Assembly: GCA_037447605.1 (NCBI GenBank) | Contig: CM074816.1 | Coordinates: forward strand, 310,001-374,000 | Origin: Zygnema circumcarinatum SAG 698-1b | Lineage: Eukaryota; Plantae; Zygnematophyceae | Direction of reading: 5' to 3' | DNA length: 64,000 nucleotides | Part shown: one piece after another, positions 35,286 to 42,287 of the stretch | Layout: each line of letters opens with the position of its first letter | Numbering within the stretch: position 1 is the first letter of the stretch | The notes under the pieces: model-generated | Told to the model about the DNA's origin: nothing | Seen by the model: the letters and a program-made list of their open reading frames with translations, nothing else | Databases searched by the model: none | Made by a program: the position numbers and the translations under genes

Positions 35286-36705
35286 TTGTTGTATCTCCCC
35301 CCACCCCTCCCTACATCCCTCACTTGCTGTTGCGCTCCCATGGACTCCCTCTCTCCCCGACCGTACACTCTACCTCCATGCCTCACCCTCCCCTCCCTTC
35401 CGTCTCCCCCACTCTTGGCGCTGCCCAACCAGCATTTCAGGGTTGTCAAGAAAATTAGTTGTACAGGATTAGTAGGTCTCTTTTATCGTTTGTAAATATC
35501 TTGTATTCCTTTTCATTGTTCATCTTCTAGTTATTTTTGGTTCAGCAACAGTTTTTCGCATCTTCTGTAAAGAAACTCAGCGCTGCCAGAGACTTTCTTG
35601 TTCACCATAAAAAAATTCACTGCTTCATTCCAATGAAAAAAAAAAAAAAATCTACATTTGAATGTTTTTTTTTGTAGTTGAAGATATGATAACTTGATTC
35701 ATTAGAGAATTCCTTCTCTTTTTTGTAAGAGAAAACGTAATAATCGCCTTATTTGTAAAGACCCTGAGCCCTGGCTTTTTCTCAGTGGCAAAGTAGCTGT
35801 TTACTTTGAAAGTCGTAAATGTGCAAAGAGAAATCAAAGCCTAACAAGTGAGAAGTGACATGTCATGGCTGCTGTTCAAAAATAATGCTCCATGTACCTG
35901 CCTAGGCCTTATACACGTCTTCAACGGATGGAGCCATGTTCATGCCAGAGAAATTTCGCTCGGAGAATGTATGAAGAGAGGGCTCGTAGCTTGTTTCGAT
36001 TTAGTGTAGAATTCATTTTTTTGCTTTAATGGAGAGAGGAGGGCGAGCGAGAAAAGTCTATTTTTTTTTTCAAGCCAAGAAGCAGAGAAGAGAAGATGAG
36101 AGCGACATCTTTGTTTCATTGTTTAGTTTAGTTTTCATTTGTTTTGCTCTGTAAAGAGCAAAACCTTTTAGTGTGGAATAACAGTCGAATAATTAGTGAT
36201 TTGAATGATGAAACTTGTCTAGAGGCCTTTTGGATCTAAGCCATCTTGAGCTATAGCCTGTTTATTTTGGAAGAGTTTGCAGTCATGTAATGTATACTAG
36301 CCATTCAAACAATGAAAATATGCTCAAATTTGTACTTTCTCCTTTGCTTTTTCACCGATAATTGATGACCGAGCATGGTTTGTGTTCGTCGAGGCCGATC
36401 TCGTATTGGGTCAAAGCGACGAAGCGGTCTCTTCTGCTTTCTTTCAACGACGAAGGTTGGCAAAAAGTCTACAACACATAAGAACCCCTCCTAACAGCCT
36501 ATCACACATCTTATAAAAAAATGACCGCCTAACCTTCTCCCAAAACCAAAGGCTTTGGAGACTCTCAAAATTGAGAAAGGTCACAATGACCTTCACTCTG
36601 TAGCAACAAAGAAACTCTCTCGCCATAAATTTCACGAGTCTTGCGCCTTGGCATCTCAATGCGCGCTTCACTCAACTATCGCTACATGTAACGCATTTCC
36701 GTTCA

Positions 36706-37169
36706 TCACATGGAACCTCGTTTTGCTGCCGCCCAGTTTGCGTTGATGAAGGATTTGGCGTGATTGGCTAAATCTTCTGAGTCTTCCCACCTGCCGGCAA
36801 CGAAGCATAAATGTTATGAGGAATAAACGAATACAAAACAAGTCACATAAATCCAATTACTGGGTTTCAACCTCTCCAATTAAAAAAGCATTTATTCTAA
36901 TGTATTAAGAGAGAGAAGGCTAGTGATGACTCATTGACAAAGACTACTCTCCTGGAGAAGAGGCAGCCATGGCTTACAAATTCCGCCACACGCAGAGCAC
37001 GTTGGAGAGGCTCGTGCTGACGACTTGAGACGAGAATGACTCGAAAGTGATGGGCCCCTTGTACCCCGATTTGGCGAGAGCACGGAACACCTGCTGCCAG
37101 TCGAGGTTGCCTGAACAACCCACAACCGTCAACCCATGGAAACACTCTTAACATAAACTCAGGCAGAGC

Positions 37170-37200
<31 letters not shown>

Positions 37201-37205
37201 TGTGT

Positions 37206-37237
<32 letters not shown>

Positions 37238-38983
37238 GAGAGGAAAGCATCTCTTGGTGTCAGCATGCGACTATGACATCATGTTTCCAGATGATGGTGT
37301 CAAATACATATATCACTTGGTCAGGGCAAAAGAAAGCCTTCATTAGGGGTTCTACAAAGAAGCTTAAGCTAACGACCAAAGGAAAGGGAAAAGGGGGAAA
37401 AGGAGAAAAAGCAAGAGAGGAGATAGCGAGACTGTCTACCTGTTCCAAGATAGCCGCGGTGACTTTCTCCTATGTGAAAGTATCCGAGCTTATTTCCGCA
37501 AAGCTCAATTGCGCCGGCAAGACTGCTCTCCTCAATATTCATATGATATGTGTCAAGGTGGACGATGACATTTGGATGGTTTATTTCCGCAAGCAATTCC
37601 ATACCCTGACACCAAATACAAACAACCCTAAAGCTTAATCATAACACCTGAACACAATGAACTTTCCAGCTTCATCTTTTCGTGTTAAAACAACAGTTTC
37701 AAAGTCCAAACAGAGATCAGTTTCTGAGAATACCTGAGCTGCTGTATTTAGGACATTCGTCTCGTATCTATTAGCCACTTCCAAGCCCAAAATGACCCCC
37801 CCGTCTGCTGCCTGCTGTGCTACTCTTCGGAGAGATCTGACCAAGTGGTCCTTTCCAGCTCCCCCTACAAACGGTCCGGGATATTTTCCAAGAGCGGAAT
37901 ATGTGATGCCGGTTAAGTAACGAGCTCCAATCCCTTTCGCCACCCTTAGAGCTTCCAGTAACAGCTGCCACCACAGGCCCTTACTTTTTAGATTCGATAA
38001 ATAAAGGTTGCAGTAGTTACAGGGTCCCTCATTGTAAGAAAAAAATATAAGGGCTATTGAGAAAGAGATCGTGAAATCTGGTGATGTAGGAGAATGTAGG
38101 ATGTATGTACCTCTTCTCCCTTAGCCGCAATGTCCGGGTCGGGGCTTGAAACGTCGGCCTCAAAGCTGAGCCCTAGAGAGGTCGCTGCCGCCATTCCGTG
38201 CTCTGAAAGGACCGAGCGAGTGAAGGCGGAGTCCACGGACTGCGGGTCTCCCACCGACACTGTTCCCTCCTTTCCCCCCAGGTGTGGGCTCCACCTGCGA
38301 TGTGTGCCACGTGGCAGCACTTCATTGCAGGGAACCTGACTGCACTACAGGGACAGCAGTCCTCATTGCCTGTCTTTTTTATTCCATACGTCACACGAGA
38401 AAAAGTGTGGCTTCTATGCAACAGAAAGGGTCATCGTGCGTGGATGAATGCAACGAAATTTAGAAATGCGTGGAAGGAGTTTAGAAGAAATCTCTAGAGG
38501 AAACGTATTTCAGCATGAATTAGTGGTTGCCATCCCTTGGCAACTAAAATATAGAGAAAACTTAACCCATCTGATGACCTGCTTAAGTTCGAGCATTTGG
38601 CGGCTGGCGAGAATACTTGAAGGAGATTCATATGCAGAAATACCTTCAATAAGGTTGTAACCAAGCTTTGCCGATTGAGAAACTGCGGCAACGCACTCGT
38701 CTCGACTCCATCCCCCGACCCACACCTGTGAGTGGACGCCTATTAAGGACGGATCTTCGTCTTCCACGATTCCGCCATGGCTTCCAGCACTCGCACATCG
38801 CACAACCCATCCTCTCCGCTTTCTTATTTCTCCTTCATGAAACCCCCCATACTGACGCGTTGCGAAGGAAACGGGGGGTGATAAATGCGTAAGGGAAGCA
38901 GAAGGGTGAAAGGAATGGCGAGAGAGAGAGAGTGTGAGGGGCAAGGCGGGGAGACGGAGGGAGGGGAGCGCAGCCATGGCCAT
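36706..38983 (-). CDS. D-tagatose/D-psicose (ketose) 3-epimerase family protein with a putative plastid transit peptide
   Basis: Six exons: 38983-38644, 38269-38111, 37964-37734, 37605-37440, 37110-36978 and 36790-36706. Motifs IGVHSQVWVGGWS, LGYNLIE, SLGL..DVSSPD, LEVANRYETNVLNT, HLDTYHMNIEE, FHIGESHRGYLGTG, ITFESF and WRNLW. The N-terminal extension is about 75 aa, Ser/Arg/Ala-rich, and ends VVRCA. Confidence 0.93.
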
Positions 38984-39250
38984 GGCTGCTACTGCCAAGA
39001 CTGGGCTCTCTGCCAACTGGCAAGACTGGGCTCTCTGCCAACAAACGTCTGCCAACGAACCTAACGTATCGGCATTGCATCATATCGTACATAACGTATC
39101 GTTTTATATCGTACGAGCATACGATATTACGATACCGTCCGCAGGCGGTACGGCGAGTCAAAGATTCAAACTGTCGCGTCACGGCTCCATGTCTGTGGTG
39201 GACGGCGCGGATGCATGCATGCATGCTCCATGCGGTGGGGCATGGACATG

Positions 39251-39508
39251 GGCATTGGCATTGGCATTGGCATTGGCATTGGCATTGGCATTGGCATTGG
39301 CATTGGCATTGGCATTGGCATTGGCATTGGCATTGGCATTGGCATTGGCATTGGCATTGGCATTGGCATTGGCATTGGCATTGGCATTGGCATTGGCATT
39401 GGCATTGGCATTGGCATTGGCATTGGCATTGGCATTGGCATTGGCATTGGCATTGGCATTGGCATTGGCATTGGCATTGGCATTGGCATTGGCATTGGCA
39501 TTGGCATT
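39251..39508. repeat. (GGCATT)43 microsatellite
   Basis: Perfect 258-bp hexamer array between the divergent epimerase and GT90 genes. Confidence 0.97.
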
Positions 39509-39941: not shown

Positions 39942-42287
39942 ATGGCGGTTCGGGTGAGTGGGAGGAAGAAGCTGCAGCGGCGCCTTTTGGGAGCGGCTTT
40001 CGTTTCTGCGGTGATATAGTCTTGCTTTTCCCACTCAGAGACAGAGACAGAGACAGAATCTTTGGACCTAAAAACCCCAAAATCCGGTGAATATTTCAGT
40101 ATTTGTGGAAACAATGAAGTTCTGGCTAATTTGATGAGCAATTATTATTTCCCCTCCGTTTCATGTTCAGGCGCTCTTCTTCTTTCTGGTGATCAATCGG
40201 CAGCCATCTCTTCCTAAAGAAAAAACGAGTTATAGAGAAGGGAGAGAAGACAGACAAACAGATGAGAACATCAGCTCCAGCATGATGGAAACAGAGTTAC
40301 AAAACGAAACAAGCAAATATGATCTTGGAAAAAGTAACACAACCCCAATCCTACCGCAAAATCGAGTCCTGAATGGTAACCTTTCAGGGGCCATGCCTGA
40401 AAAGAAGGAGAACGTAGAGAAAGCTTCGTATCGTCCTAACGAAGTTGTTGAACCTCGAAGGAGAGGAGGAGCGAGAAGAATTTGCCCCGACTACTTTAAG
40501 CATATTTGGGAAGATTTGCAGCCATGGCGGCAGCGAGGCGGCATCAGTGAGGAGGTTATCGCCTACACACAGCGCGGCGCTTCGTTCAGACTGCAAATCG
40601 TGAACGGGGAAGTCTTCGTTCACCACTTTCGGGTGAGGGTTATGGGAGGGAGGGGAAGGGGGAGGGGTACAAATATCAGAGGGAGAAGTAGACGACAGAG
40701 AATGGGGGAGGAAAGGAAAGGGGGAGGGAGGCGAGGGGAGGGGGGGGGATAAAAACCGAAGAGGCAGAAGTTGACGAGAGAGAGATTGGAGGAGGGAGGG
40801 AGGGAGGGAGGGAGGGGATTGGAGGAGTTAAAAAGCCAGAGGCAGAAGAAGATGCGAGAGAGAGGTAGAAGAAAGAAGAGGTAGAGAGAGAGTTAGAGGA
40901 AGAGGGAGAGAAGAGGGAGAGGGAGAGGGAGGGAGGGAGGGGAGGGGTAGGGTGAGGGGGAAGTGTGGCCTTGGGTGGGGGTATCCTTGCATGCGGTTGA
41001 GCATTGGCGATCCATGGCGGTAGCACTATGAGTAGGGCTCTAACTTTTCGAAGGACTTTTGCTCCAAACTGAAATCCGGAAAATATTTCTCCCATCCATG
41101 CGAGTGCAGATGTGCTACCAGACTCGAGCGATGTTCACGATTTGGGGGATTCTGCAACTTATCAAAAGGTGAATCTTAGACCATAACCATCAATACACAT
41201 ACACTCGAGTAAATATTATATGCTTTAATGGCACGAGCAACAGAGTCGATACGGGACTTTCTAATTCCTCAAACATTAATCGAAATCACAATTTCATTCC
41301 ATCAAACTAAATCTTCCACACTCTTTTGTTTTGCGAACCTCTGACTCTCCCACTGTTGTTAACCCCTTAGGTTTCCGAGCCGAGTTCCGGATGTGGATCT
41401 CATGATCCACTGTATGGATCAACCCTTGATCCGACGAAGCCGCTTTCTTCTCCACCCGCACCCTCCCCTCCTCTTGAAGTATTGCAGCAGTCCGGACCAC
41501 ATGGATGTTGTTTGGCCGGATTGGTCCTTTTGGGGATGGTCAGTTCCCACCTCTTCCATAGAAAATCAATCAATTTTTAATCCTGGTAGTCATCTTATCA
41601 AACTATTTCAAAAACCCACATAGAAGCATCCCGAAATTACAAATTTTCAACCAAGTGAACTCTACCCTCCTTATGTTTTGGTGGGGCAGGCCGGAGGTAA
41701 AGATAGAGCGATGGCCCAATACAAGGGAAAAGATATCGGAGGGGTCGGGGGGTATTCCATGGAGAGAGAGGGAAAATCTCGGCCAATGGAAGGGCGCCGT
41801 GTGGGTGGCTCCTAGGCTTCGGCAGCCAATCGTTGACTGCCACGATGCTCCAAACCACCAATGGAGAGTCAAAGCAGAGGACACAAAGTGGCTGCAGGAG
41901 ATAAGCAGCAACTCAACCAAGCTCGAAAATCAGTGCAATTACAGGTGAAATGATTGCTTTCGCCGTTGAATTTCGTTACATAGAGGTGTTAGTATTCGAA
42001 TTTAAGGGTGCTAGATCGTTCGCATTGTATGCTACGATGGGTTTCGTGTTCAGATGGTGGGAATGAACTTGTTTGCAGGTATAAGATTTATGTGGAGGGT
42101 ACGGCCTGGTCATGCAGTCTTAAGTATTTGATGGCCTGCGGCTCTACGCTGCTCTATGTGCGACCCATCTATTTTGATTTCTTTTCGAGATCACTTCAGA
42201 GTTATAGGCATTTTCTTCCAGTGCGGCGGCCCGACGAAGCTCCAATATGCGAGAGTCTAAAGGTGAGTGGGAGAGGAAAAGAGGGGG

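What the first reader, a model, noticed from the sequence alone, without database searches (positions are those of the whole stretch)
36706..38983. Bacterial-type ketose 3-epimerase domesticated with five introns and a transit peptide
Seen: all four metal-ligand positions of the D-tagatose/psicose 3-epimerase family (E in LEVANRYE, D in HLDTYH, H in FHIGE, E in ITFES) plus the substrate-binding His and Arg. Established: characterised members are bacterial and interconvert D-fructose/D-psicose or L-ribulose/L-xylulose, and this is not a standard angiosperm enzyme. Inference: an old horizontal acquisition giving plastid rare-sugar metabolism or sugar-phosphate repair.
Basis: partly seen in the sequence, partly recalled or inferred. 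Interest (0 to 1): 0.7.

Follow-up and report, generated by a model that had tools for sequence, protein, structure and literature searches.

The report
Old algal ketose 3-epimerase gene
This is a real, expressed, six-exon nuclear gene of a green alga for a sugar-rearranging enzyme (ketose 3-epimerase) known so far only from bacteria; it is not a recent bacterial import but an old algal gene, shared by green and red algae and not found in land plants.

Summary
Observation confirmed. The minus-strand gene 38983..36706 has six exons and five GT-AG introns and encodes 367 aa. RNA-type contigs from two studies contain exactly this spliced form, with no mismatches and a poly(A) end.

All nine active-site residues of the solved Methylomonas L-ribulose 3-epimerase (7CJ4) are present. 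An 81-aa acid-poor leader absent from bacterial relatives precedes the barrel.

Interpretation only partly supported. The genome is a streptophyte alga, not an angiosperm. Leader-bearing orthologues occur in Closterium, Mesotaenium, Klebsormidium, Chlorokybus, Mesostigma, Myrmecia, Ulva and the red alga Porphyridium.

In a careful tree, 33 algal rows are separated from 70 bacterial rows by one branch (96/92). Window introns 1, 3 and 5 have the same position and phase in Closterium, Klebsormidium and the chlorophyte Myrmecia. The gene therefore predates the chlorophyte/streptophyte split.

A clade of algae plus cyanobacteria is rejected (AU p = 0.001). No land-plant protein appeared in two large searches.

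Bacterial relatives sit beside xylulokinase and sugar ABC-transporter genes, which suggests pentulose interconversion.

Verdict: a new, uncharacterised eukaryotic member of a known enzyme family. Plastid targeting and the physiological substrate are inferred. The scan did not report this gene before.

The parts
38984..39007 (-). 5' UTR, minimum extent
   Evidence: RNA-type contigs reach 39007 (X1 record 1) and 39001 (X5). No ATG lies upstream of 38983 within this stretch.
38644..38983 (-). Exon 1 (340 nt): start codon, 81-aa leader and first barrel strand/helix, ending LIE plus 1 nt (phase 1)
   Evidence: joint 38259/38644 in four runs; residues 82-113 align to 7CJ4 residues 10-41.
38741..38983 (-). 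Coding part of the N-terminal extension (aa 1-81), a presumed transit peptide
   Evidence: Absent from all bacterial homologues (A1). No D/E in the first 49 aa, 8 R/K, 17% S+T, and VRC|A at aa 61-64. No localisation predictor was available.
38732..38734 (-). His84 codon (equivalent of MetLRE His12, binds O5/O6 of the substrate)
   Evidence: Alignment; residue role from PMC8167858.
38260..38643 (-). Intron 1 (384 nt, GT..AG, phase 1)
   Evidence: Same position and phase in Closterium, Klebsormidium and Myrmecia. Minor retained-intron contigs and a frameshifting alternative acceptor at 38296-38295.
38111..38259 (-). Exon 2 (149 nt); holds Ser141 (codon 38179-38177, equivalent of MetLRE Ser69)
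37965..38110 (-). Intron 2 (146 nt, phase 0)
   Evidence: Shared with Closterium and Klebsormidium.
37734..37964 (-). Exon 3 (231 nt); holds Glu225 (37781-37779, metal ligand and catalytic) and Glu231 (37763-37761)
   Evidence: PF01261 positions 71-140; 7CJ4 residues 93-165, E = 1.2e-13.
37606..37733 (-). Intron 3 (128 nt, phase 0)
   Evidence: Same position and phase in Closterium, Klebsormidium and Myrmecia.
37440..37605 (-). Exon 4 (166 nt); holds Asp258 (37554-37552), His261 (37545-37543), His284 (37476-37474) and Arg290 (37458-37456)
   Evidence: PF01261 positions 142-189; 7CJ4 residues 168-222, E = 8e-19.
37111..37439 (-). Intron 4 (329 nt, phase 1), containing a (GA)34 microsatellite at 37174-37242
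   Evidence: Shared with Closterium; the Klebsormidium intron lies 4 nt away; Myrmecia has none here.
36978..37110 (-). Exon 5 (133 nt); holds Glu319 (37042-37040, metal ligand and catalytic)
   Evidence: PF01261 positions 207-233; 7CJ4 residues 224-266, E = 2.8e-12.
36791..36977 (-). Intron 5 (187 nt, phase 2)
   Evidence: Same position and phase in Closterium, Klebsormidium and Myrmecia.
36706..36790 (-). Exon 6 coding part (C-terminal helix, stop TGA at 36708-36706)
36376..36705 (-). 3' UTR up to one poly(A) site
   Evidence: Poly(T) loose end before 36376 in run X5. Other contigs run on to 36343, 36334 and at least 36300.

Best explanation
The locus is an expressed nuclear gene of a streptophyte (probably zygnematophyte-like) alga. 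It encodes a metal-dependent ketose 3-epimerase of the L-ribulose 3-epimerase subgroup, fused to an about 60-80-aa organelle-targeting leader that is probably a chloroplast transit peptide.

The inferred mechanism is the one shown for the family. A Mn2+/Co2+ ion held by Glu225, Asp258, His284 and Glu319 binds O2 and O3 of a free ketose. The two glutamates exchange the C3 proton through a cis-enediolate. This interconverts C3 epimers: L-ribulose/L-xylulose, D-ribulose/D-xylulose and D-allulose/D-fructose.

The gene is not a recent import. It belongs to an algal clade present in streptophyte algae, chlorophytes and a red alga. It already carried at least three of its introns before chlorophytes and streptophytes split, and it was apparently lost in land plants.

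The most likely role, which is an inference, is conversion of free pentuloses (for example D-ribulose to D-xylulose) so that a kinase can return them to the pentose-phosphate or Calvin pool.
For: Shown:
- The gene model and its expression.
- Each of exons 2-5 on its own finds ketose 3-epimerase structures first; the Methylomonas enzyme 7CJ4 ranks first for exons 3-5 and third for exon 2, where the Arthrobacter enzymes 8YEB/5ZFS lead. The other top hits are Mesorhizobium L-ribulose 3-epimerase-type enzymes. The barrel part of exon 1 aligns to 7CJ4 only weakly (E 0.75).
- All nine active-site residues listed in PMC8167858 are conserved (and the residue mapping).
- Exons 3-5 match consecutive parts of PF01261.
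- Named eukaryotic orthologues with N-terminal extensions: Closterium, Mesotaenium, Klebsormidium, Chlorokybus, Mesostigma, Myrmecia, Ulva, Porphyridium.
- In the careful tree, 33 algal or alga-like rows are separated from 70 bacterial rows by one branch, UFBoot 96 / SH-aLRT 92.
- The window exon fragments, entered as separate rows, all fall on the algal side. Exons 2 and 3 group with Closterium (91) and exon 4 with Mesotaenium (87).
- Introns 1, 3 and 5 are identical in position and phase in Closterium, Klebsormidium and Myrmecia.
- In the 80 best bacterial loci, recurrent neighbours are an FGGY kinase (16 loci; the representative, from Leptolyngbya, passes the XylB xylulokinase cut-off, 426 against 380 bits), a ribose/allose-type binding protein (16 loci), ROK/LacI regulators and an SDR.

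Inferred:
- Plastid targeting rests on the leader's composition and the V-x-[AC]|A motif.
Against: - No enzyme of this algal clade has been assayed, so substrate preference is extrapolated from bacterial relatives about 50% identical.
- No targeting predictor or localisation data were available; the leader could be mitochondrial.
- Only 11 of the 33 'algal' rows carry an organism name. One unnamed row was checked and is eukaryotic (a Ty3 element lies next door). One row (P0343) that I had provisionally called alga-like by length fell among bacteria and was relabelled after the tree was seen.
- With long outgroups included, the backbone collapses to a polytomy, and algal monophyly is then only 'not rejected' (AU p = 0.19).
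- Absence from land plants rests on the best 120 hits of two word-indexed searches, not on genome scans.
Confidence: 0.72

Rival explanations
1. A lineage-specific or recent horizontal transfer from a bacterium into this alga or its close relatives, later fitted with introns and a leader.
For: Identity to bacterial proteins is high: 55-59% summed over exons, against 60-65% to algal orthologues. All characterised members are bacterial.
Against: Orthologues with leaders exist in seven named green-algal genera and one red alga. The algal rows form one side of a 96/92 branch and none nests in a bacterial group. Three intron positions are shared with a chlorophyte.
Confidence: 0.04
2. Endosymbiotic gene transfer: the gene came from the cyanobacterial ancestor of the plastid. 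This would explain its presence in red and green algae and its plastid-type leader.
For: The distribution across red and green algae and the probable plastid targeting fit EGT. A few Leptolyngbya/Phormidium-type cyanobacteria carry close homologues at 60-62% identity.
Against: The cyanobacterial sequences nest inside Chloroflexota within the core bacterial clade (99/90 and 96/96). Forcing algae plus cyanobacteria into one clade costs 117 log-likelihood units, AU p = 0.001. Only 2 of the 80 best bacterial loci are cyanobacterial.
Confidence: 0.1
3. The protein belongs to the same TIM-barrel superfamily but has a different activity, for example a sugar-phosphate 3-epimerase (UlaE/SgbU type), 5-keto-L-gluconate epimerase (IolO) or hydroxypyruvate isomerase. 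This would serve sugar-phosphate repair rather than free-ketose epimerisation.
For: Close homologues score below the D-psicose 3-epimerase equivalog cut-off (157-163 against 300 bits) and also hit IolO at 116-119 bits. No algal member has been assayed.
Against: The free-ketose-binding residues of MetLRE (His12, Ser69, Glu158, His188, Arg217) are all kept. Scores to the L-ribulose-5-phosphate 3-epimerase models are only 21-47 bits against cut-offs of 200-317. The best structural relatives for every exon are free-ketose 3-epimerases.
Confidence: 0.1
4. The enzyme is the same, but the leader directs it to mitochondria or to both organelles rather than to the plastid.
For: The leader is net positive and acid-poor, which also fits mitochondrial presequences. 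No predictor could be run.
Against: The N-terminus is uncharged and rich in Ala, Ser, Pro and Leu. The leader is long (about 60 aa or more). A V-x-[AC]|A stromal-processing-type motif occurs in the window, Closterium, Klebsormidium and Chlorokybus. This rests on established transit-peptide features, not on a test.
Confidence: 0.2

Closest known systems
Methylomonas sp. L-ribulose 3-epimerase (MetLRE; PDB 7CJ4-7CJ9; PMC8167858)
   Same: It is the best solved relative for exons 3-5 taken alone, and third for exon 2 (E from 8e-19 to 2.5e-7). It has the same four metal ligands, the same two catalytic Glu, and the same His/Ser/Glu/His/Arg sugar-binding residues. Both have a (beta/alpha)8 barrel of about 286 aa.
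   Different: MetLRE is a bacterial, intron-less enzyme without a leader. The window protein carries 81 extra N-terminal residues and a somewhat longer C-terminal tail. Identity is only about half, and the window protein's activity is untested.
Arthrobacter globiformis ketose (D-allulose) 3-epimerase (5ZFS, 8YEB) and Mesorhizobium loti L-ribulose 3-epimerase (3VYL)
   Same: They are the next-best structural relatives for exons 3-5, and the Arthrobacter enzymes are the best for exon 2. They belong to the same L-ribulose 3-epimerase subgroup within the ketose 3-epimerases.
   Different: These are tetrameric bacterial enzymes with long C-terminal helices. The oligomeric state of the algal protein is unknown.
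D-tagatose 3-epimerase (Pseudomonas cichorii, 2QUL) and D-psicose 3-epimerase (Agrobacterium, 2HK0); NCBIfam NF051856
   Same: Same fold, metal site and chemistry.
   Different: They are much more distant (E 1e-3 to 1e-9 per exon). Algal homologues reach only 157-163 bits against the 300-bit equivalog cut-off.
Database orthologues in algae: Closterium CLOM_g8165, Klebsormidium nitens 'Xylose isomerase', Porphyridium purpureum 'L-ribulose 3-epimerase' KAA8497342.1, and Chlorokybus, Mesostigma, Mesotaenium, Ulva and Myrmecia models
   Same: They share the leader-plus-barrel architecture. Identity to the window exons is 52-65%. The Closterium gene has all five window introns.
   Different: They come from different species and none has been characterised. 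Several public models are truncated or fused (P0168, P0172, P0158).

Membership tests
Ketose 3-epimerase family (D-tagatose/D-psicose/L-ribulose 3-epimerases; Pfam PF01261 fold) | Xylose-isomerase-like TIM barrel | tested here: met
   Exons 3, 4 and 5 match PF01261 positions 71-140, 142-189 and 207-233 in order (E 6e-6, 5e-6, 2e-4). Each is below the whole-protein cut-off only because it is a fragment. Full-length orthologues carry PF01261.
Ketose 3-epimerase family | Metal site Glu-Asp-His-Glu, the two Glu also acting as the catalytic acid/base pair | tested here: met
   Glu225, Asp258, His284 and Glu319 align to MetLRE Glu152, Asp185, His211 and Glu246 (residue roles). They are invariant in A1 and A2.
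Ketose 3-epimerase family | Residues binding O1/O2 of the ketose (Glu158, His188, Arg217 in MetLRE) | tested here: met
   Glu231, His261 and Arg290.
L-ribulose 3-epimerase subgroup | Closer to LRE-type enzymes than to DTE/DPE types, with the His12/Ser69 pair that binds O5/O6 | tested here: met
   7CJ4, 5ZFS/8YEB and 3VYL head the hit lists of exons 2-5; exon 1 gave only one weak 7CJ4 match. His84 and Ser141 are conserved.
D-psicose 3-epimerase equivalog (NCBIfam NF051856) | Whole-protein score at or above the curated cut-off of 300 bits | tested here: not met
   Orthologues P0151 and P0164 score 163 and 156 bits. The window protein could only be scored exon by exon (31 and 59 bits).
Ketose 3-epimerase family | C3 epimerase activity on free ketoses with Mn2+/Co2+ | not testable with these tools
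   Needs a recombinant enzyme assay.
Chloroplast transit peptide | N-terminal extension absent from prokaryotic homologues; acid-poor, hydroxylated, net positive; V-x-[AC]|A processing motif | tested here: met
   81 aa; no D/E in the first 49 residues; 8 R/K; 17% S+T; VRC|A at aa 61-64. All 17 algal homologues examined have 35-100-aa extensions. These features also overlap with mitochondrial presequences.
Chloroplast transit peptide | Predicted or observed plastid localisation | not testable with these tools
   No TargetP/PredAlgo-type tool and no localisation data were available.
Recent horizontally transferred gene | Recipient sequences nest inside a bacterial donor clade, and the gene is confined to one eukaryotic lineage | tested here: not met
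   Algal rows form their own side of a 96/92 branch. The gene is present in streptophyte algae, chlorophytes and a red alga. Introns are shared across the chlorophyte/streptophyte split.
Endosymbiotic (cyanobacterial) gene transfer | Sister relationship to cyanobacteria | tested here: not met
   AU test p = 0.001, with a log-likelihood loss of 117. Cyanobacteria nest within Chloroflexota.

The most novel reading that the evidence does not exclude
This gene represents the first eukaryotic clade of ketose 3-epimerases. It would be an ancient, plastid-targeted enzyme of red and green algae that was lost when plants moved to land. It would let algal plastids interconvert free pentuloses, or make rare sugars such as D-allulose, linking polyol or dephosphorylated-sugar pools back to the Calvin/pentose-phosphate cycle.
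Probability: 0.4. Interest if true: 0.5.

Novelty: new member of a known kind. Interest (0 to 1): 0.35.

Why it matters
Ketose 3-epimerases are studied almost entirely as bacterial biocatalysts for rare sugars, and I found no paper on a eukaryotic one. An expressed, intron-bearing, leader-carrying orthologue group spans red and green algae. This implies that free-ketose epimerisation is a long-standing part of algal, probably plastid, carbohydrate metabolism, and that it was dropped in land plants. The group offers a source of eukaryotic enzymes and a testable case of gene loss at the origin of land plants. It also corrects an attractive but wrong 'recent HGT' reading. It is not a new kind of system.

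Tried and rejected
- My first three calls (5-7) failed because I gave coordinates in descending order. I repeated them correctly.
- The search for related loci with exon 3 alone found no bacterial relative. The alignment query A1 found 590.
- Five paper searches and two look-ups found no report of an algal or plant ketose 3-epimerase. The hits concerned ribulose-phosphate 3-epimerase or bacterial enzymes.
- The search of earlier findings by words found nothing on this gene.
- Pfam on ten flanking window ORFs gave only a GT90 match in the divergent neighbour, so the genomic context gives no functional clue.
- My ORF caller produced shadow and fused ORFs in the high-GC bacterial loci. Only clusters that were later given a Pfam or NCBIfam identity were used.
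- The tree with long outgroups did not resolve the root, so I make no claim about the direction or donor of any ancient transfer.
- P0343, which I first labelled alga-like by length, fell among bacteria and was relabelled after the tree was seen.
- Exons were used singly and as separate tree rows. I did not use structure prediction, the protein atlas or complex prediction, because sequence similarity to solved structures already settles the fold.
Full report
**1. The observation**

Read on the minus strand, the region contains an ATG at 38983 and a TGA at 36708-36706. Six coding segments are joined by five GT..AG introns:

| Exon | Coordinates |
|---|---|
| 1 | 38983-38644 |
| 2 | 38259-38111 |
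| 3 | 37964-37734 |
| 4 | 37605-37440 |
| 5 | 37110-36978 |
| 6 | 36790-36706 |

The coding sequence is 1104 nt, giving 367 aa. The model does not rest on my reading alone. Logan contigs of four public runs from two studies carry exactly these five joints with no mismatch. One 1492-nt contig spans all six exons. One contig ends in a poly(T) run at 36376, which is a poly(A) tail on the gene's strand. The runs are not on record as RNA, but contigs that lack all five introns and carry a poly(A) tail can only be mRNA-derived.

Minor forms also occur: intron 1 retained, and an alternative acceptor 35 nt upstream of exon 2 that shifts the frame.

**2. What the protein is**

- Exons 3, 4 and 5 match consecutive parts of Pfam PF01261.
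- Exons 2, 3, 4 and 5 each find ketose 3-epimerase structures first. These are always the L-ribulose 3-epimerase-type enzymes: 7CJ4 (Methylomonas), 5ZFS/8YEB (Arthrobacter) and 3VYL (Mesorhizobium). 7CJ4 ranks first for exons 3-5 and third for exon 2. They rank ahead of the D-tagatose and D-psicose enzymes. The barrel part of exon 1 gave only one weak match, to 7CJ4 (E 0.75).
- I used the residue roles given in the MetLRE structure paper (PMC8167858). All nine active-site residues are present, as listed in the table below.

| Role in MetLRE | Window residues |
|---|---|
| Metal ligands and catalytic pair | Glu225, Asp258, His284, Glu319 |
| O1/O2 binders | Glu231, His261, Arg290 |
| O5/O6 binders | His84, Ser141 |

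Full-length orthologues score 157-163 bits on NCBIfam's D-psicose 3-epimerase equivalog, whose cut-off is 300. They score only 21-47 bits on the L-ribulose-5-phosphate 3-epimerase models. The protein is therefore a ketose 3-epimerase of the LRE subgroup. It is not a DPEase equivalog and not a sugar-phosphate epimerase.

**3. The leader**

The barrel starts at residue 82. The preceding 81 residues have no counterpart in any bacterial homologue (A1).

- They contain no acidic residue in the first 49 positions.
- They hold 8 Arg/Lys and 17% Ser+Thr.
- They carry VRC|A at positions 61-64, which fits the V-x-[A/C]|A stromal-processing pattern.

All 17 algal homologues examined carry extensions of 35-100 residues. 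The first residues (MA..AAL..LRL.PL) are recognisably similar in the window, Closterium and Klebsormidium. This supports organelle targeting, probably to the plastid. No predictor or localisation data were available, so it remains an inference.

**4. Relatives and history**

*Homology searches.* A full-library phmmer search with exon 3 found only 196 cluster representatives at E ≤ 0.001, several of them with N-terminal extensions. Word-indexed searches with one of these, and then with a profile of 21 algal sequences, plus a cluster look-up, named these orthologues:

- Streptophyte algae: Closterium (two strains), Mesotaenium, Klebsormidium, Chlorokybus, Mesostigma.
- Chlorophytes: Myrmecia, Ulva.
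- Red alga: Porphyridium, where the protein is annotated 'L-ribulose 3-epimerase'.
- Also an MMETSP transcript and abundant marine metagenome clusters with prasinophyte-like leaders.

No land-plant protein appeared, even with the alga-biased profile. In that search the first 23 hits are all of the algal type, and bacterial proteins start at 478 bits.

*Host organism.* Earlier notes of this scan say the genome is an alga related to land plants. The exon fragments agree, since they group with Zygnematophyceae. None of the named species is the window's own: identity summed over exons is at most 65%.

*Trees.* I took the 80 best bacterial loci from one genome per GTDB species. They comprise Actinomycetota 42, Pseudomonadota 31, Chloroflexota 4, Cyanobacteriota 2 and Acidobacteriota 1.

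- With long outgroups the backbone is a polytomy. Even so, a core bacterial clade that includes the cyanobacteria, themselves nested within Chloroflexota, is well supported at 96/96 and excludes every alga.
- Without the outgroups and with more algal rows, 33 algal or alga-like rows are separated from 70 bacterial rows by one branch: UFBoot 96, SH-aLRT 92, present in 97% of bootstrap trees.
- The AU test does not reject algal monophyly on the outgroup data set (p = 0.19).
- The AU test does reject algae plus cyanobacteria as one clade (p = 0.001, log-likelihood loss 117).

*Caveats on the trees.* Only 11 algal rows carry names. One unnamed row was checked and is eukaryotic, since a Ty3/gypsy element lies next to it. 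One row that I had guessed to be algal by its length (P0343) fell among bacteria. The tree is unrooted, so I do not name a donor or a direction of transfer.

*Introns.* I mapped the exact exon structures of the Closterium, Klebsormidium and Myrmecia genes on their genomic loci.

| Window intron | Context and phase | Closterium | Klebsormidium | Myrmecia |
|---|---|---|---|---|
| 1 | LIE\|V, phase 1 | same | same | same |
| 2 | GEE\|LL, phase 0 | same | same | not shared |
| 3 | NTAAQ\|, phase 0 | same | same | same |
| 4 | LGT\|G, phase 1 | same | 4 nt downstream | absent |
| 5 | WRN\|L, phase 2 | same | same | same |

The Porphyridium gene has no intron. Three introns shared between streptophytes and a trebouxiophyte place an intron-bearing gene in the common ancestor of green algae. 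This evidence is independent of the protein tree and rules out a recent or lineage-specific transfer.

**5. How it probably works**

*Chemistry (established for the family, inferred here).* A divalent metal bound by Glu225, Asp258, His284 and Glu319 chelates O2 and O3 of a free ketose. The two glutamates move the C3 proton through a cis-enediolate, inverting C3.

*Physiological substrate (inferred).* In the 80 bacterial loci the recurrent neighbours are:

- an FGGY kinase in 16 loci; the representative, from Leptolyngbya, passes the XylB xylulokinase cut-off;
- a ribose/allose-type periplasmic binding protein in 16 loci;
- ROK or LacI regulators;
- a short-chain dehydrogenase.

MetLRE prefers L-ribulose, then D-ribulose, then D-allulose. 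Together these points suggest pentulose interconversion that feeds xylulokinase. In an algal plastid the corresponding role would be to return free ribulose or xylulose, arising from polyols or from dephosphorylated intermediates, to the pentose-phosphate or Calvin pool.

My confidence:

| Claim | Confidence |
|---|---|
| Enzyme class | about 0.8 |
| Plastid location | about 0.55 |
| Pentulose-salvage role | about 0.3 |

**6. Comparison and novelty**

By every sequence criterion I could test, this is a member of the known ketose 3-epimerase family, LRE subgroup. It differs from all characterised members in being eukaryotic, spliced and leader-bearing. Orthologues already sit in public databases under vague or wrong names ('hypothetical protein', 'Xylose isomerase'). 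I found no paper on them.

The gene is an old algal gene, apparently lost in land plants. It is neither a recent domestication nor a demonstrable cyanobacterial inheritance. Interest is moderate (0.35).

The surroundings add nothing to the function: a divergent GT90 glycosyltransferase gene and a (GGCATT)45 microsatellite.

Noticed in passing
window 39239-39508 and 38991-39042: A (GGCATT)45 hexanucleotide microsatellite lies about 250 nt upstream of the start codon, in the intergenic region shared with the divergent neighbour. A 25-nt unit repeated twice overlaps the 5' UTR.
   Followed up: no
window 37174-37242: A (GA)34 microsatellite inside intron 4. The read tool skipped it as a repeat.
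   Followed up: no
window 38267-38671 and 38295-38296: Minor transcript forms. Intron 1 is retained (contig depth about 10-13 against 100-220 for the spliced form). An alternative acceptor 35 nt upstream of exon 2 would shift the frame; it was seen in two runs of one study.
   Followed up: partly
window 40189-40752 (+): The divergently oriented neighbour begins with an ORF matching glycosyltransferase family 90 (PF05686, E 6e-12). Nine other flanking ORFs had no Pfam match.
   Followed up: no
L081:8001-8894: An intron-less member of the algal clade (P0156) lies on an unnamed ENA metagenome contig directly beside a Ty3/gypsy retrotransposon. It is therefore a eukaryotic copy, possibly a retrogene.
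   Followed up: partly
P0158, P0172, P0168 (public protein models): P0158 fuses a Myb protein to the epimerase and duplicates a 29-aa segment. P0172 (Closterium Naga37s-1, 558 aa) reads through introns. P0168 (Mesotaenium) lacks the first barrel strand. All three look like annotation errors.
   Followed up: no
L008, L015: Two contigs titled 'MAG: Bifidobacterium breve' carry epimerases that group with freshwater Actinomycetota such as Nanopelagicales. The taxonomic label looks doubtful.
   Followed up: no
L083 and L084 (Klebsormidium and Myrmecia genes): Klebsormidium and Myrmecia each have an extra intron at the conserved SL|G site, but 1 nt apart (phase 1 against phase 0). The Klebsormidium counterpart of window intron 4 lies 4 nt downstream. 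These may be cases of intron sliding.
   Followed up: partly
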